Sequence record: OP310984.1
Direction: 5' to 3' (one strand)
DNA: 64,000 bases
Positions 32,169 through 36,171 of this stretch are shown piece by piece. The notes beneath the pieces were generated by a model that saw nothing but the letters and a program-made list of their open reading frames with translations, did no database searches and was not told the origin of the DNA. The stretch's first letter is position 1; every line of letters begins with the position of its first letter. Both the position numbers and the translations under genes were made by a program.

Positions 32169-33683
32169 ATGTTTGAGTTATTGTTGTCTTCTGGACTAAC
32201 AAATACGCCTATATATTCCGATCCTTATCCAGGTCCTAAAACACTGATAGCTGGGACAAGGGAATTAGGTTTGTATGGTGAAACAACATCTTCAGAATTA
32301 TTTGGTTATGATGATGCAGCTAAATTAGTTAATATGACATTTGGAACAGTAATCAATGATGGACAACCATGGTTAAAGTTCTCTAATAAAAATGTTACTT
32401 GTTACATACCAAAGAAACCAGCTCGTAAATCAATACAAAAATCACGGCTTAATAATGCCGGACTCCGTAATGGTGACTATGAAGTTAGATTTATGGGGAA
32501 CATTTATAAATTTGGTTTATTAACAATGGCTGGTGCCACATCAGAATGGCAAAGGTTACTTTATAATGTTCACGTATCTAATTTAAATGGTGCTAACTGG
32601 CCTTATAAATTTACAGATAATGACTTAGGTATTAACCAAGCGGTCGCTGGTGGTATTAGCACTGATGGTACTACTAACTGGGGAAGAGACCCAGGTAGTG
32701 ATCCAGTTAATGACCAGCTCTATCGTGGCTACTATGCGATTGATATAACTAGCTCGTCAAGTAGTGAAACGGGTGCTGCAACCCAAGGTTGGCGTCCAGT
32801 GGTTTATGCTAGTGGTACATATCCATTCGTTAAAGATAATGTTATTAAACTTACTGATTTTGAAACTGATAACGAAATGGCAGCAGGTGCCCAAATAGGT
32901 AACTTAGTCTATTATTACGGTGGTAAGAATAATGCTAATACTGCTCTACGTACACTGAATTTAGTCACGGGTAAGTTAACAACATTACAACCAACTGGTA
33001 CGCCTATAGCAGTTAAACAATGCTCGGCTGTTGCATTTAATGGTAAAGTATATTTCTATGGTGGTGAAAGTGCCACAGATGGTGTACTTACTAAAGATAT
33101 GCAGTGTTATGATCCTGCAACTAATACATGGGAAATAAAATCACCAGGCACGATAGCTTGCCGGTATGCACGTGGAACTAGTCTTAATGGGTTAATCTAC
33201 ATATTAGGTGCAGCTGATACAACTGCGACAAATAATCGTGGATTTACATTAATGTACAATCCAACTACAGATACATATACCAGTGGTGCAGCATTTAATG
33301 ATACTGGGGAATATACCCAAGATTATTCAGTGAGTATTTATAATAATAGCGTATGCGTTATTGGTGGTACGGTTGGTGCTGGTGTTAATACTGGAATCAT
33401 ATCGTACAATCAAACCAACAATAATTGGTCCAAACCAATAACTACAGGTATACCTCTTGGTGCAGCTATTAATATACGCCCATCTGGTGAACTTTATGTA
33501 ATCGCTGGTGAAAATCAAAATAACGCACCAATTAAGTATTATGAACCACGATTAGCACGATGGATAAATTTAGGTAATTTAGAAACTGGTTTAGTGGATG
33601 CAGGTTTTGCCAATACGTTTAATAATGACGGTAAGATTTATGTTCTAAACGGTAATCAGAATTTAAAATACCAAATTAGTTAA
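32169..33683 (+). CDS. Virion structural protein with C-terminal Kelch-type beta-propeller (gp83-like)
   Basis: Repeats VYYYGG, VYFYGG, IYILGA, VCVIGG, LYVIAG at about 45-50 aa spacing, with Y.P.T.TW-type motifs. Confidence 0.75.
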   Translation: MFELLLSSGLTNTPIYSDPYPGPKTLIAGTRELGLYGETTSSELFGYDDAAKLVNMTFGTVINDGQPWLKFSNKNVTCYIPKKPARKSIQKSRLNNAGLRNGDYEVRFMGNIYKFGLLTMAGATSEWQRLLYNVHVSNLNGANWPYKFTDNDLGINQAVAGGISTDGTTNWGRDPGSDPVNDQLYRGYYAIDITSSSSSETGAATQGWRPVVYASGTYPFVKDNVIKLTDFETDNEMAAGAQIGNLVYYYGGKNNANTALRTLNLVTGKLTTLQPTGTPIAVKQCSAVAFNGKVYFYGGESATDGVLTKDMQCYDPATNTWEIKSPGTIACRYARGTSLNGLIYILGAADTTATNNRGFTLMYNPTTDTYTSGAAFNDTGEYTQDYSVSIYNNSVCVIGGTVGAGVNTGIISYNQTNNNWSKPITTGIPLGAAINIRPSGELYVIAGENQNNAPIKYYEPRLARWINLGNLETGLVDAGFANTFNNDGKIYVLNGNQNLKYQIS

Positions 33684-33689
33684 CGAAAT

Positions 33690-33718
33690 AAACCCTCCCG
33701 TAATGGGAGGGTTTTATG
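33690..33718. terminator. Bidirectional terminator
   Basis: AAACCCTCCC-GTAAT-GGGAGGGTTT-TATG between convergent genes. Confidence 0.75.
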
Positions 33719-33786: not shown

Positions 33787-34155
33787 TTAATATCCTTCAT
33801 TAAGTAGTTCTGCTAGAGCACGTGCCTGTGAAATATCAGTAGAAGCAAAAACATCAGAAAGATAGTTATCATGTTCTTTTGCATTCTGACGCAATTCATC
33901 CATTAGATGTTTATTAGATACCGCCCATACTTTCCACAGATTTTTATAATCATCATATTTGGGATTATACCCGTCTAGTGGTGGTTTTCCTTTACCAGCT
34001 TTCCAATGGTTGGAGTATATGCGATATCCTTTACAATCTAACTGCCAAGCTTCCTCAATTGTTCTGCCATCAGGAAGCCTTGCGTAAAGAGCCGAGAATC
34101 TTTTGTCACCAACAGATGAACATTCATATCCTCCTCGGCGCTTCCACTGATATAT
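33787..34155 (-). CDS. Hidden 122-codon frame without canonical start; ATA-initiated gene or -1 frameshift extension of gp82
   Basis: IYQWKRRGGYECSSVGDKRFSALYARLPDGRTIEEAWQLDCKGY...ISQARALAELLNEGY*; protein-like, fills the gap up to the terminator; absent from ORF track. Confidence 0.75.
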   Translation of the reverse strand: MYQWKRRGGYECSSVGDKRFSALYARLPDGRTIEEAWQLDCKGYRIYSNHWKAGKGKPPLDGYNPKYDDYKNLWKVWAVSNKHLMDELRQNAKEHDNYLSDVFASTDISQARALAELLNEGY

Positions 34156-36071
34156 TACTTTGGGTTCTTATAGGTATTAATAAACTTCTCTAGCAGGGTG
34201 TCCATTTTAGGAGCACCCATGATCTTCTGTGTGATTTCAATAGCATTAACCCTACCACCTGTTAAGTTTACGCCAACTTCACGGCGATGGTGTTCACTAA
34301 TTCCTTCCATCATTGAGAATTCCATCACACATGTTTCACGTGCAATATTTAGAATCTGACTAACGTTAGGATATGTCGACACGATGTCAAGGTCGGCGAT
34401 ATGACAGAAGATTAAGGTTTTATAATTCGGTAAATCTTTAACACACTGCAATCCATTTGGACCTGCCATGTATGATGGTAGTGTAACAATCCAATCATTA
34501 TGGCCAATAACATATTGATCAAGTTCATGCACCATCTGATCTGAACTTGAACCAATGACACATGGCTCTGGTCTATTCAAATACCAGAAGTGCATATCGT
34601 CACATAGTCGTTTTGGGTTAGAACTAAAGTTCTTATAGTCAGATGCCTTAGAGAATAGACTTATAGAGCGACCAAGGTCATTTACTTGTTCATCAAGTTG
34701 TTCTAGTCGAATGGAATCGATGATGTTATAAAGACCATATTTGATTTTATGCTTAGTCTGCATCTCACGGTGCCAATCGATACCACCAAGATGTGCAGTT
34801 TCTTTAAAGGTTAACTTACCAAATTCCATTACATATCTAATAGAATCACCATAGGTAAAGTTATCATTTAATATAAAATCATCCACCGGTACCCATTCAT
34901 TACTACCTACATTTTTAATATATTTAGTAATAACGCCGCCTGGTCGGTCAACTAGTTGTTTATTAAAACCTTCAATAAAATCTTCTAAGTCCTTATCATT
35001 TTTAATGGTCGTGGATTTATCGATGTTTAGTTCTTTTCTAAGAATAGACTCTAACCGATAGTTAGGATCACGTCCTTTAGCTAATCGAGTTACTCGATAA
35101 GTTGACATAGAATCGATACATTGAAAACTAGAGGGTGCTGTAATCCAATGCCATTGATCCTCCGGTCCTTTAGATTTAGTGACCCCAGATGCAGTGGTGG
35201 TCATAGGTTCATCAATCTTAAAATGGAAATACCTATAATTCTTAGGTACCGATGGATCAGAAAAAACATCAGCTGGATTAACACCATAGTGTTCTAATGT
35301 TTTTAAGATTCTACCAATGTCGAAGCTAATATTCCAGAATGCGAAGAAATCTGGTTTCCAGGTATGTAGTCGTTTAAAACATTCAATAATAATATCTACT
35401 GGTGTTTCAACAACCATTACTTCAATATCTAGACCACGTTCTTTAATTAGATGTGATAATACCTCTTCTTTTTGTGCTTGTTCTAATGTCTCTTTCACTG
35501 GATCTTCAATATCACTAACCCATCGTTTTAAATAGGCTAAGAAAGCTTTGTTCTTATGTGTAACTGACATACAGATAATCTGACCATCGTTCTCAGCTTC
35601 ATAAACGTTGGTTTCGATGTCACCGCCAGCAACAGTGTTTAGAGAGATTAGACCAGGATAACGTTCTTGATAATCATGCTTCAGATAACAGGTTGAACTA
35701 ACATCACTGCCATATAGGTAAGGACTACGCGCTAGTTGACGAAGAGATCTAGCCGAATAGTCACCTAGGATTTTACTAATCTTACGTTTCATGTCAATTT
35801 GAGTTGACATGTATTTAACTAAGTTACGCTCATATTCGTAATCTTTCTTTTCTTTATGGTTACGCATTCCTTTTGAGGTAATCCAAAAAGGACGCTGGTA
35901 GTTTTCCCACATCCTTAAATTATTTGCAGTTGTACCATCTTCAAAATGAATTCGTTCTTTAACGAAATGCGCATCTGTAAACTTACCAAATTGATCAGTA
36001 CAATAAGTAATATGTTTGGCTTCAATGCCCTTAATCTTTTTCTTATTTGTAACCTGTTGTTCATTAGACAT
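34155..36071 (-). CDS. Split family-B DNA polymerase subunit: 3'-5' exonuclease plus palm motif A (gp82-like)
   Basis: ExoI GDIET, ExoII WNISFD, ExoIII YNIIDS, pol motif A ADLDIVSTYP; motifs B/C absent (partner subunit gp50 lies elsewhere in phiKZ). Confidence 0.85.
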   Translation of the reverse strand: MSNEQQVTNKKKIKGIEAKHITYCTDQFGKFTDAHFVKERIHFEDGTTANNLRMWENYQRPFWITSKGMRNHKEKKDYEYERNLVKYMSTQIDMKRKISKILGDYSARSLRQLARSPYLYGSDVSSTCYLKHDYQERYPGLISLNTVAGGDIETNVYEAENDGQIICMSVTHKNKAFLAYLKRWVSDIEDPVKETLEQAQKEEVLSHLIKERGLDIEVMVVETPVDIIIECFKRLHTWKPDFFAFWNISFDIGRILKTLEHYGVNPADVFSDPSVPKNYRYFHFKIDEPMTTTASGVTKSKGPEDQWHWITAPSSFQCIDSMSTYRVTRLAKGRDPNYRLESILRKELNIDKSTTIKNDKDLEDFIEGFNKQLVDRPGGVITKYIKNVGSNEWVPVDDFILNDNFTYGDSIRYVMEFGKLTFKETAHLGGIDWHREMQTKHKIKYGLYNIIDSIRLEQLDEQVNDLGRSISLFSKASDYKNFSSNPKRLCDDMHFWYLNRPEPCVIGSSSDQMVHELDQYVIGHNDWIVTLPSYMAGPNGLQCVKDLPNYKTLIFCHIADLDIVSTYPNVSQILNIARETCVMEFSMMEGISEHHRREVGVNLTGGRVNAIEITQKIMGAPKMDTLLEKFINTYKNPK

Positions 36072-36141: not shown

Positions 36142-36171
36142 CATAAAGCCTCCCCTAGGGGAGGCGATATG
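36142..36171. terminator. Hairpin flanked by CATAA/ATATG
   Basis: CATAA-a-GCCTCCC-CTAG-GGGAGGC-g-ATATG. Confidence 0.7.

What the first reader, a model, noticed from the sequence alone, without database searches (positions are those of the whole stretch)
33787..34170. Candidate -1 frameshift extending the DNA polymerase exonuclease subunit by 123 aa
Seen (minus strand): gp82 ends AAC-CCA-AAG-TAA, so a canonical slippery heptamer C-CCA-AAG (34164..34158) abuts the stop. The -1 frame opens one codon earlier (after TAA 34170..34168) and runs through a protein-like 122-codon frame to 33787; its first ATG is at codon 85. Six nt after the heptamer, AUCAG-UG-GAAGC (34151..34140) pairs with GCUUC-CUGAU (34078..34069), and GCCGAG (34139..34134) pairs with CUCGGC (34096..34091). 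Known: A-AAG-type sites with a 3' stem drive bacterial -1 shifting, as in dnaX. Inference: two polymerase isoforms (638 and 761 aa). Alternative: TAATA is a mutated or non-canonical TAATG, i.e. a stand-alone ATA-start gene; I recall similar stand-alone phage proteins, so this alternative is real.
Basis: partly seen in the sequence, partly recalled or inferred. Interest (0 to 1): 0.8.

Follow-up and report, generated by a model that had tools for sequence, protein, structure and literature searches.

The report
Frameshift-extended phiKZ DNA polymerase subunit
In phiKZ-type giant Pseudomonas phages, the gene for the N-terminal half of the replicative DNA polymerase ends in a conserved slippery site. 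A fraction of ribosomes almost certainly slip back one base there and add a conserved 123-residue domain of unknown function, giving a second, longer polymerase isoform that I found described nowhere.

Summary
The sequence observation is correct. The window is a phiKZ-genus phage. On the minus strand gp82 (DNAP-N, 638 aa) ends AAC-CCA-AAG-TAA. The -1 frame opens three codons before the shift point and runs 123 codons with no ATG, GTG or TTG before codon 86.

That frame encodes a real, widespread protein family (phrog_9995, E 1.7e-55; AF2 pLDDT 97) under strong purifying selection.

I examined 20 related lineages in which this ORF lies in the -1 frame after the polymerase gene.
- All 20 carry an in-phase heptamer of the three types known to be highly shift-prone in E. 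coli: C_CCA_AAG, G_GGA_AAG or A_AAA_AAG.
- 15 of the 20 have no canonical start codon.
- The heptamer is kept at synonymous positions although dS is saturated.

Two other relatives encode polymerase and domain as one in-frame ORF. Three loci (two lineages) separate them by a single in-frame TAG.

A 761-aa trans-frame isoform made by -1 frameshifting is therefore the best explanation, at about 0.8. It has not been shown at the protein level.

Stand-alone ATA initiation is not excluded as a minor route. The domain's function is unknown; its fold resembles NADAR only weakly.

The parts
34155..36071 (-). gp82 = DNAP-N, the N-terminal subunit of the split B-family DNA polymerase (638 aa, zero frame, stop TAA 34157..34155)
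   Evidence: ORF list. phrog_3011 DNA polymerase, E 1.2e-241. Identical to Phikzvirus records annotated as DNA polymerase. Role described in preprint 10.64898/2026.09.30.755723.
34158..34164 (-). Slippery heptamer C_CCA_AAG in the gp82 zero frame, directly before the stop
   Evidence: Unique in the 64-kb window. Conserved, or replaced by G_GGA_AAG or A_AAA_AAG, in all 20 relatives with the -1 arrangement. All three types are named as highly shift-prone in E. coli in the review PMC5009743.
34168..34170 (-). TAA in the -1 frame that closes the shift window on the 5' side; only GAA-CCC-AAA lies between it and the extension
   Evidence: translation (*EPKVIYQW...). The same tight window of 2-4 codons is seen in eight other lineages.
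33787..34158 (-). -1 frame extension: 123 sense codons (V-I-Y-Q-W-K-R-R-G-G-Y-E-C-S-S...) plus TAA 33789..33787, encoding a compact conserved domain
   Evidence: phrog_9995, E 1.7e-55, covering 2-123 of 124 profile positions. 831 hits in 1.84 billion representative proteins. AF2 pLDDT 97. dN/dS 0.05-0.2 among start-less lineages, including the 85 codons before the first ATG.
34153..34155 (-). ATA codon (Ile 2 of the extension) at the position where some relatives have ATG or GTG; there is no Shine-Dalgarno sequence before it
   Evidence: Alignments. This position is ATG in PhiPA3 and L095, and GTG in 201phi2-1 and Viktualia. It is ATA in phiKZ and phiHQ, ACA/ACT in L019, HPP-Temi, L022 and L023, and GTA/GTT in Phabio and L021.
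34069..34151 (-).
   Evidence: Folds. Consensus fold of 10 relatives: -8.2 kcal/mol with no covariation. Pair counts: 64.4% paired against 62.9% in shuffles.
33690..33714 (-). Terminator-like hairpin (10 pairs) after the extension ORF. No such site lies between gp82 and the extension, so both are probably on one transcript.
   Evidence: A second hairpin at 36148..36165 lies upstream of gp82.

Best explanation
The 3' end of phiKZ gp82 is a programmed -1 ribosomal frameshift site.

Mechanism:
- Most ribosomes read ...AAC-CCA-AAG and stop at TAA. This gives the 638-aa DNAP-N subunit whose structure has been solved.
- A fraction slip back one base on C_CCA_AAG. The Pro and Lys tRNAs re-pair with CCC and AAA. 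The shift-prone A_AAG and the adjacent slow-to-decode stop codon probably help.
- These ribosomes then read GTA-ATA-TAT... for 123 more codons.
- The product is a 761-aa isoform in which a compact, probably enzymatic, domain hangs from the palm-insertion end of DNAP-N.

What is shown and what is inferred:
- Shown here: the anatomy; that the extension frame encodes a real protein under selection; that the shift signal is what is conserved, not a start codon; and that related phages encode the same fusion in one frame.
- Inferred: that slippage really happens, its efficiency, and what stimulates it.
- A guess from context only: the appended domain acts on modified or damaged nucleic acid or nucleotides at the replication fork.
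For: 1. The -1 frame encodes a genuine family. Its model is confident. It is under purifying selection in lineages without a start codon. L022 vs L023 gives dN 0.023 and dS 0.48. The N-terminal 85 codons give dN/dS of about 0.07. Within the phiKZ genus there is 1 nonsynonymous change against 9 synonymous ones.

2. I examined 12 lineages with the phiKZ-type junction.
- All 12 have X_XXA_AAG in the polymerase frame: C_CCA_AAG 11 times and G_GGA_AAG once.
- The heptamer is directly before the stop in 11 of them and one codon before it in 201phi2-1.
- The codon before it encodes N, P, S, L, V or A, yet always ends in the base that completes the heptamer.
- Given the amino acids and each gene's own codon usage, this codon choice has a joint probability of about 1e-11 over 8 lineages, treating them as independent.

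3. Eight more basal lineages have NNA-AAA-AAG (A_AAA_AAG) 9-41 codons before the polymerase stop. The -1 frame is open from there into the domain, with no start codon.

4. These are exactly the three heptamers reported as highly shift-prone in E. coli (PMC5009743).

5. 15 of the 20 lineages have no ATG, GTG or TTG at or near the N-terminus of the domain.

6. There are natural in-frame fusions.
- P0089/L097 is a 698-aa ORF made of DNAP-N, a Gly linker and the domain, on a contig with a phiKZ-type capsid gene.
- In P0061/L178 the polymerase C-terminal piece and the domain form one ORF. It reads ...S-E-P-K-D-K-P-L-Y-T-W..., colinear with the phiKZ -1 frame E-P-K-V-I-Y-Q-W. It lies inside the same clade.

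7. In L115/L116 and L127 the polymerase and the domain are in one frame, separated only by TAG.

8. No terminator or promoter-like break lies between gp82 and the extension. There is no SD before ATA, whereas gp82 itself has GAGG 8 nt before its ATG.
Against: - There is no protein-level evidence. I found no published detection of a 761-aa product or of a junction peptide. The 2026 cryo-EM preprint used 638-aa gp82, which is active.
- No conserved stimulatory RNA structure or upstream SD-like element was found.
- The family exists as a stand-alone gene with its own start in many other phages.
- PhiPA3, L095, 201phi2-1 and Viktualia have ATG or GTG at the N-terminus. Separate translation is therefore possible in some relatives and cannot be excluded at low level from ATA in phiKZ.
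- In one derived sub-clade (D6, Psa21 and six others) the ORF lies in the +1 frame and mostly has GTG, TTG or CTG. That does not fit -1 shifting.
- The lineages share ancestry, so the counts are not fully independent.
Confidence: 0.8

Rival explanations
1. The extension is a stand-alone gene. It is translated on its own from the non-canonical ATA (or by reinitiation of ribosomes that terminate at the overlapping TAA), giving a separate 14-kDa protein. The heptamer would be a by-product of the conserved Pro-Lys end of gp82.
For: Most family members are stand-alone proteins of about 125 aa. PhiPA3 and L095 have TAATG at the same place, and 201phi2-1 and Viktualia have GTG. Stop-start overlaps of the TAATG type are common coupling devices (general knowledge).
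Against: Relatives with the same junction have ACA, ACT, GTA or GTT instead of a start, yet keep the ORF under selection. Eight lineages with A_AAA_AAG have no start at all. The third base of the preceding codon always completes the heptamer whatever the amino acid, and GGA, a rare Gly codon in that gene, is used where the heptamer is G_GGA_AAG. There is no SD before ATA. In-frame fusions exist.
Confidence: 0.12
2. The two frames are joined at the RNA level by transcriptional slippage of the phage RNA polymerase, not by the ribosome.
For: The basal lineages carry a run of six A (A_AAA_AAG). Homopolymer runs can support transcriptional slippage (review PMC5009743, general content).
Against: phiKZ and 11 other lineages have CCCAAAG or GGGAAAG, with only three A. 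That is far too short for known slippage. Phase-specific conservation of X_XXA_AAG is the signature of tandem tRNA re-pairing.
Confidence: 0.03
3. In the phiKZ genus the frame is an untranslated remnant: a gene that lost its ATG and is decaying.
For: ATA is one mutation from the ATG seen in PhiPA3. Annotators call only fragments of 29-38 aa here.
Against: The frame is intact in all 47 Phikzvirus records. Within the genus there is 1 nonsynonymous against 9 synonymous differences. Other start-less lineages keep it at dN/dS 0.05-0.2 with saturated dS.
Confidence: 0.03

Closest known systems
E. coli dnaX tau/gamma (-1 frameshift at A_AAA_AAG in a replicase subunit gene)
   Same: A -1 shift on an X_XXA_AAG-type heptamer in a DNA replication gene gives two isoforms that share their N-terminal part. 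The basal relatives here use the very same A_AAA_AAG.
   Different: In dnaX the shifted ribosome terminates almost at once and makes the shorter product, helped by an upstream SD-like site and a 3' stem-loop (general knowledge). Here the shift occurs at the last sense codons, bypasses the stop and adds a whole 123-aa domain. No conserved stimulator was found.
Tail assembly chaperone G/GT of lambda and other tailed phages (G_GGA_AAG and variants)
   Same: A -1 shift near the end of the upstream ORF fuses it to a downstream-encoded domain. The arrangement is conserved across phages while the exact heptamer and its position vary. G_GGA_AAG is used in one relative here (L021/L123).
   Different: The gene function differs: morphogenesis there, replication here. 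I know of no earlier report of this device in a phage DNA polymerase gene.
E. coli copA (-1 frameshift on C_CCA_AAG; recalled from memory, paper cited in PMC9548414)
   Same: The same heptamer, working in a gamma-proteobacterial translation system.
   Different: The copA shift truncates the protein to a small chaperone and depends on a downstream pseudoknot (from memory). Here the shift extends the protein.
Bacillus subtilis cdd (-1 shift at CGA_AAG close to the stop codon; reference listed in PMC5009743)
   Same: A shift on A_AAG at the very end of a gene lets the ribosome pass the stop and lengthen the protein.
   Different: cdd adds only a short tail of no known function (from memory). Here a conserved folded domain is added.
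Retroviral gag-pol type expression (frameshift in some lineages, stop-codon readthrough in others)
   Same: Related genomes reach the same fusion product by different recoding routes. Here these are -1 shift (20 lineages), an in-frame TAG (L115/L116, L127) and a plain fusion (L097, L178).
   Different: This is an analogy only. Readthrough of the TAG in L115 and L127 is an inference and has not been shown.

Membership tests
Bacterial programmed -1 ribosomal frameshift site (X_XXY_YYZ type) | Heptamer X_XXY_YYZ in phase with the zero frame, of a type that is shift-prone in bacteria | tested here: met
   C_CCA_AAG at 34164..34158 is in phase with gp82. The review PMC5009743 names C_CCA_AAG, G_GGA_AAG and A_AAA_AAG as highly shift-prone in E. 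coli.
Bacterial programmed -1 ribosomal frameshift site (X_XXY_YYZ type) | The -1 frame is open from the heptamer into a long coding region that has no start codon of its own | tested here: met
   The -1 frame is closed by TAA three codons before the shift point. It is then open for 123 codons, and the first ATG/GTG/TTG is at codon 86.
Bacterial programmed -1 ribosomal frameshift site (X_XXY_YYZ type) | The shift signal is conserved among relatives beyond what the encoded amino acids require | tested here: met
   20 of 20 lineages with the -1 arrangement carry one of three shift-prone heptamers in phase. The synonymous and neighbouring third positions are fixed although dS is saturated; joint probability about 1e-11.
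Bacterial programmed -1 ribosomal frameshift site (X_XXY_YYZ type) | The downstream frame is under purifying selection as protein | tested here: met
   dN/dS is 0.05-0.2 among start-less lineages, including codons 1-85.
Bacterial programmed -1 ribosomal frameshift site (X_XXY_YYZ type) | A stimulatory element (3' stem-loop or pseudoknot at 5-9 nt, or a 5' SD-like sequence) | tested here: inconclusive
No SD-like sequence lies upstream in phiKZ. The stop codon directly after the heptamer is conserved in 11 of 12 lineages and may act as the stimulator (inference).
Bacterial programmed -1 ribosomal frameshift site (X_XXY_YYZ type) | A trans-frame protein is detected | not testable with these tools
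   Needs proteomics, a western blot or ribosome profiling. Nothing was found in the papers and supplements searched.
Stand-alone phrog_9995 gene | Its own canonical start codon and ribosome-binding site | tested here: not met
   ATA stands at the position where the family profile starts, with no SD upstream. Stand-alone members in N4-like and other phages do have starts.
NADAR / YbiA superfamily (PF08719 and relatives) | A sequence-profile match | tested here: not met
   No Pfam hit for the window protein. Only 1 of 32 members hits NADAR-DarT1, at E 0.008. hhalign of family profile against YbiA profile gives probability 0.2%.
NADAR / YbiA superfamily (PF08719 and relatives) | The same fold | tested here: inconclusive
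   In Foldseek against the PDB, the highest TM-scores are YbiA 2b3w (0.50) and a NADAR-ADP-ribose complex 8bau (0.42), but E-values are 5-9. Many weak NADAR and DUF4326 hits appear in BFVD at TM 0.4-0.57.

The most novel reading that the evidence does not exclude
A sub-stoichiometric, frameshift-made isoform of the phiKZ-type replicative polymerase carries an enzyme domain that works at the fork inside the phage nucleus. This domain would be distantly NADAR/N-glycosidase-like and elsewhere partners with DUF4326, SLOG, RNase H and AlkB-like domains. It would remove a base or backbone adduct from template DNA, for example ADP-ribose added by a host defence. The clade-restricted 'little finger' insertion of gp82 would be its docking site. 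Different lineages would tune the dose of this isoform by frameshift, readthrough or full fusion.
Probability: 0.15. Interest if true: 0.85.

Novelty: new member of a known kind. Interest (0 to 1): 0.72.

Why it matters
- phiKZ is the model nucleus-forming jumbo phage. Its polymerase has just been reconstituted and solved as a 638-aa + 731-aa core with an RNase H-clamp partner. A third polypeptide form carrying an extra conserved domain would change the parts list of that replisome.
- It could explain a puzzle raised in that study: a clade-restricted 'little finger' insertion with no known partner.
- It corrects the annotation of at least 47 deposited Phikzvirus genomes, where the region is called as 29-38-aa fragments.
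- It gives a clean natural series for studying how recoding signals evolve: in-frame fusion, in-frame stop and three different slippery heptamers, all leading to the same product.
- It attaches a first biological context (replication) to a large uncharacterised domain family. That family also occurs in giant multi-domain phage proteins.

Tried and rejected
Rejected. The consensus fold of 10 relatives is -8.2 kcal/mol with no covariation. Pair counts do not differ from shuffles.
- **A shorter hairpin, CGGAGGA/UCCUCCG.** It is present in seven relatives but lies 18 nt or more from the heptamer and is degraded in phiKZ. Not pursued.
- **Naming the domain.** All of the following came back empty or insignificant.
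  - Pfam, NCBIfam and PADLOC.
  - PDB sequence profile search.
  - Source annotation names.
  - hhalign against YbiA/NADAR.
- **Literature.** Searches for a frameshift or extension of gp82, for PHIKZ082.1, for phiKZ ribosome profiling and for frameshifting in jumbo phages found nothing relevant.
- **Supplements.** The supplements of the Grad-seq and antisense papers hold no protein evidence for this region.
- **More in-frame fusions.** Close relatives of the in-frame fusion P0089 were not found in IMG/VR.
- **Structure prediction.** It was repeated with permitted rows.
- **The trans-frame 761-aa product.** The two pieces were treated apart.
- **tRNA genes.** None are present in the window.
Full report
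**What the window is.** The 901 bases around the finding are 99-100% identical to 40 Pseudomonas phage records of the genus Phikzvirus and 95-99% identical to seven more. Examples are PA7, SL2, KTN4 and phiKZ itself. On the minus strand the 638-aa ORF 34155..36071 is phiKZ gp82 (phrog_3011 DNA polymerase, E 1.2e-241). A 2026 preprint (10.64898/2026.09.30.755723) shows what gp82 is. [quoted passage not shown] Its partner is gp50 (DNAP-C). Residues 589-638 of gp82 belong to a 'palm insertion' domain. That work used the 638-aa protein and mentions no longer form.

**Check of the observation.**
- gp82 ends AAC-CCA-AAG-TAA.
- The -1 frame is closed by TAA at 34170..34168. It reads GAA-CCC-AAA and then 123 sense codons from GTA (34158) to TAA (33789..33787).
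- There is no ATG, GTG or TTG before codon 86.
- Any entry into this frame from gp82 must therefore happen within three codons, and the heptamer fills them.
- CCCAAAG occurs only here in the 64-kb window on either strand (4.9 expected).
- Annotators of the deposited genomes call only fragments here: a 29-aa ORF in another frame, and the 38-aa tail. The tail is PHIKZ082.1 in RefSeq, justified there by 'RNA sequence analysis'.

**The -1 frame encodes a real protein.**
- Its translation matches phrog_9995 over 2-123 of 124 profile positions (E 1.7e-55).
- tblastn finds it in 91 phage records.
- A profile search of 1.84 billion representative proteins finds 831 members.
- A word-index search finds 693, nearly all unnamed proteins of about 125 aa with no Pfam domain.
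- AlphaFold2 with a 32-row alignment gives pLDDT 97 and pTM 0.90.
- Fourteen invariant residues, mostly polar or charged, suggest an active site.

**Start codon versus shift signal.** I collected the junction from GenBank relatives. I added two IMG/VR scans, one seeded with the domain and one with DNAP-N. I then printed the frames.

*Group A: 12 lineages with the phiKZ-type junction.*
- The polymerase ends X_XXA_AAG and the domain follows in the -1 frame. The stop comes directly after the heptamer, or after one further codon (TTG) in 201phi2-1.
- The heptamer is C_CCA_AAG in 11 lineages and G_GGA_AAG in L021/L123.
- The codon before it encodes N, P, S, L, V or A, but always ends in C (in G for L021).
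- Pro is always CCA and Lys always AAG.
- The codon where the family profile starts varies:
  - ATG in PhiPA3 and L095;
  - ATA in phiKZ and phiHQ (in phiHQ the preceding codon of the -1 frame happens to read GTG);
  - ACA or ACT in L019, HPP-Temi, L022 and L023;
  - GTA or GTT in Phabio and L021.
- In 201phi2-1 and Viktualia a short insertion puts a GTG 11-14 nt after the stop. The heptamer is kept, and the -1 frame stays open from it into the domain.

*Group B: 8 more basal lineages (Noxifer, L030, L028, L033, L108, L110, L111, L121).*
- The polymerase frame contains NNA-AAA-AAG (A_AAA_AAG) 9-41 codons before its stop.
- The -1 frame is open from there into the domain.
- No start codon is present.

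Together, 20 of 20 lineages carry a shift-prone heptamer in phase, and 15 of 20 have no canonical start. The review by Atkins et al. [quoted passage not shown] These are exactly the three found here.

**Selection.**
- Among 11 start-less lineages the domain has dN/dS of 0.05-0.2, and dS is saturated for most pairs.
- The 85 codons that precede the first ATG are as constrained as the rest. For L022 vs L023 there are 5.5 nonsynonymous against 16.5 synonymous differences.
- Inside the phiKZ genus the whole frame shows 1 nonsynonymous against 9 synonymous differences.
- With synonymous sites saturated, keeping the heptamer's wobble positions is not neutral. Given the amino acids and each gene's codon usage, the joint probability of the observed codons in 8 lineages is about 1e-11, treating them as independent. 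GGA makes up only 3% of Gly codons in the one gene that uses G_GGA_AAG.

**Natural fusions and in-frame stops.**
- The profile search returned P0089, a 698-aa protein. Residues 29-531 align with gp82 (E 4e-39 and 1e-10). Residues 558-676 are the domain.
- P0089 is one uninterrupted ORF on a 45-kb contig that also encodes a phiKZ-type major capsid protein.
- P0061 (236 aa) joins the last 92 profile positions of DNAP-N to the domain in one frame.
  - Its junction reads ...S-E-P-K-D-K-P-L-Y-T-W-S-R-K-G-G-Y-E on GAA-CCC-AAA-GAC....
  - This is colinear with the phiKZ -1 frame GAA-CCC-AAA-GTA (E-P-K-V-I-Y-Q-W).
- In a DNAP-N tree this locus (L178) lies inside the domain-bearing clade (SH-aLRT 100). 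It is next to L127.
- In L115/L116 and L127 the polymerase and the domain share one frame and are separated by a single TAG followed by CTA or CTG, with no start codon. TAG is not used by the other long ORFs in those short loci.
- Related phages thus link the same two parts by full fusion, by a possibly leaky stop, or by a slippery heptamer. That makes the fused polypeptide the conserved functional entity.

**Distribution.**
- Of 80 DNAP-N loci, 30 have the domain directly downstream. All 29 from IMG/VR form one clade (SH-aLRT 98-100). The 30th is the distant fusion L097.
- Within the clade, A_AAA_AAG lineages are basal. X_XXA_AAG-plus-stop lineages are derived.
- A sub-clade of eight lineages (group C: D6, Psa21, L027, L031, L034, L039, L040, L041) is nested among the derived ones.
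  - There the domain lies in the +1 frame and overlaps the polymerase end by about 20 nt.
  - Its first codon is GTG (3 lineages), TTG (1), CTG (2), ACG (1) or CGG (1).
  - Three of these lineages have a TTG four codons upstream.
  - This sub-clade may have returned to separate translation, for example by reinitiation. It could instead use a -2 or +1 shift on the conserved GAA-AAG-AAG. I could not decide between these.

**RNA structure.**
In a 108-nt context only the inner helix survives, and in a 201-nt context the outer one partly survives.
- Across 10 relatives with the same junction there is no consensus structure (-8.2 kcal/mol, covariation term +0.12).
The middle of the second helix is broken in 9 of 10 sequences.
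- Most relatives fold somewhat better than shuffles (z -1.1 to -3.7; one at -0.2), but with different structures.
- No SD-like sequence precedes the heptamer in phiKZ.
- The one conserved neighbour is the stop codon directly after the heptamer (11 of 12 lineages). A slow-to-decode stop next to A_AAG is a known aid to -1 slippage. That it works so here is an inference.

**Transcription context.** Terminator-like hairpins lie upstream of gp82 (36165..36148) and after the extension (33714..33690), and none lies between them. gp82 has GAGG 8 nt before its ATG. The extension has nothing comparable.

**What the domain might do.**
- No curated family matches.
- Against the PDB, the highest TM-scores are E. 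coli YbiA (0.50) and a NADAR-ADP-ribose complex (0.42), but with E-values of 5-9.
- In BFVD, below the family's own members, weak hits are enriched in NADAR and DUF4326 proteins.
- One of 32 members touches the NADAR-DarT1 model (E 0.008).
- Profile-profile comparison with YbiA homologues is negative (probability 0.2%). The only aligned stretch is the F-S-A...D-G-R-T motif.
- In other proteins the domain is fused to several partners:
  - DUF4326 (17 of 82);
  - SLOG domains cpYpsA and YAcAr (9 of 82);
  - RNase H (3 of 82);
  - an AlkB-like oxygenase;
  - PIF1/UvrD-type helicases.
- It also sits inside giant proteins of 2,000-6,000 aa.
- This context points to nucleotide or nucleic-acid modification and repair, and perhaps to counter-defence. 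It does not establish an activity.

**A lead noticed on the way.** The preprint reports that the 'little finger' insertion of gp82 (residues 350-415) occurs only in a subset of Pseudomonas chimalliviruses and may bind a protein limited to that subset. In my set the insertion is present in 23 of 30 loci that carry the domain and in 0 of 50 that lack it. This is confounded by phylogeny, but it makes the extension a candidate partner.

**Verdict.** The best explanation is a programmed -1 ribosomal frameshift that makes a 761-aa DNAP-N isoform, at confidence about 0.8. Low-level separate initiation at ATA is a minor, non-exclusive alternative. The mechanism is of a well-known kind. The instance is not described in anything I could search. 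The decisive tests are a junction peptide, a two-band western blot, a reporter assay and ribosome profiling.

Noticed in passing
window 34827..35024 (-) = gp82 residues 350-415; loci L098-L176: The 'little finger' insertion of gp82 is present in 23 of 30 DNAP-N loci that carry the downstream domain and in 0 of 50 that lack it. The 2026 preprint suggests it binds a protein limited to this subset of phages. The frameshift extension is a candidate partner.
   Followed up: partly
L115:3742-3751, L116, L127:3307-3328: In these uncultivated relatives the polymerase and the domain are in the same frame, separated by a single TAG (TAG-CTA or TAG-CTG), with no start codon. This may be stop-codon readthrough. 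TAG is not used by the other long ORFs in these short loci.
   Followed up: partly
L010, L042, L027, L031, L034, L039, L040, L041 (junctions): In a derived sub-clade (D6, Psa21 and relatives) the domain lies in the +1 frame and overlaps the polymerase end by about 20 nt. GAA-AAG-AAG is conserved in the polymerase frame, and the first codon varies (GTG, TTG, CTG, ACG, CGG). Whether it is expressed by reinitiation or by a -2/+1 shift is unresolved.
   Followed up: partly
L178:1550-3711: In this relative DNAP-N itself is divided into two adjacent ORFs (482 aa and 236 aa) at profile position 541. The second ORF is fused in frame to the domain. This is either a further gene split or an assembly frameshift.
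   Followed up: no
L107 (PhiPA3) and L008 (HPP-Temi): The DNAP-N genes of PhiPA3 and HPP-Temi carry insertions. In HPP-Temi an HNH endonuclease CDS lies inside. In PhiPA3 the match spans 2354 nt instead of 1914. This suggests an intron or another mobile insertion.
   Followed up: no
window 33787..33903 (-) and 34038..34127 (-): The small ORFs annotated in deposited genomes are by-products of not recognising the 123-codon frame. They are PHIKZ082.1 (38 aa) and a 29-aa ORF starting at the ATG after GGAGGA. The first is simply the tail of that frame.
   Followed up: yes
proteins P0001-P0150: The domain family occurs in giant proteins of 2,000-6,000 aa. It is also fused to DUF4326, SLOG (cpYpsA, YAcAr), RNase H, AlkB-like and helicase domains. 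P0001 has two copies flanking a DUF488-N3a domain, after an AlkB-like N-terminus.
   Followed up: partly
window 32169..33683 (+): The convergent neighbour is gp83, a 504-aa protein annotated as a virion structural or kelch-like protein. Its 3' end faces the terminator-like hairpin at 33690..33714.
   Followed up: no
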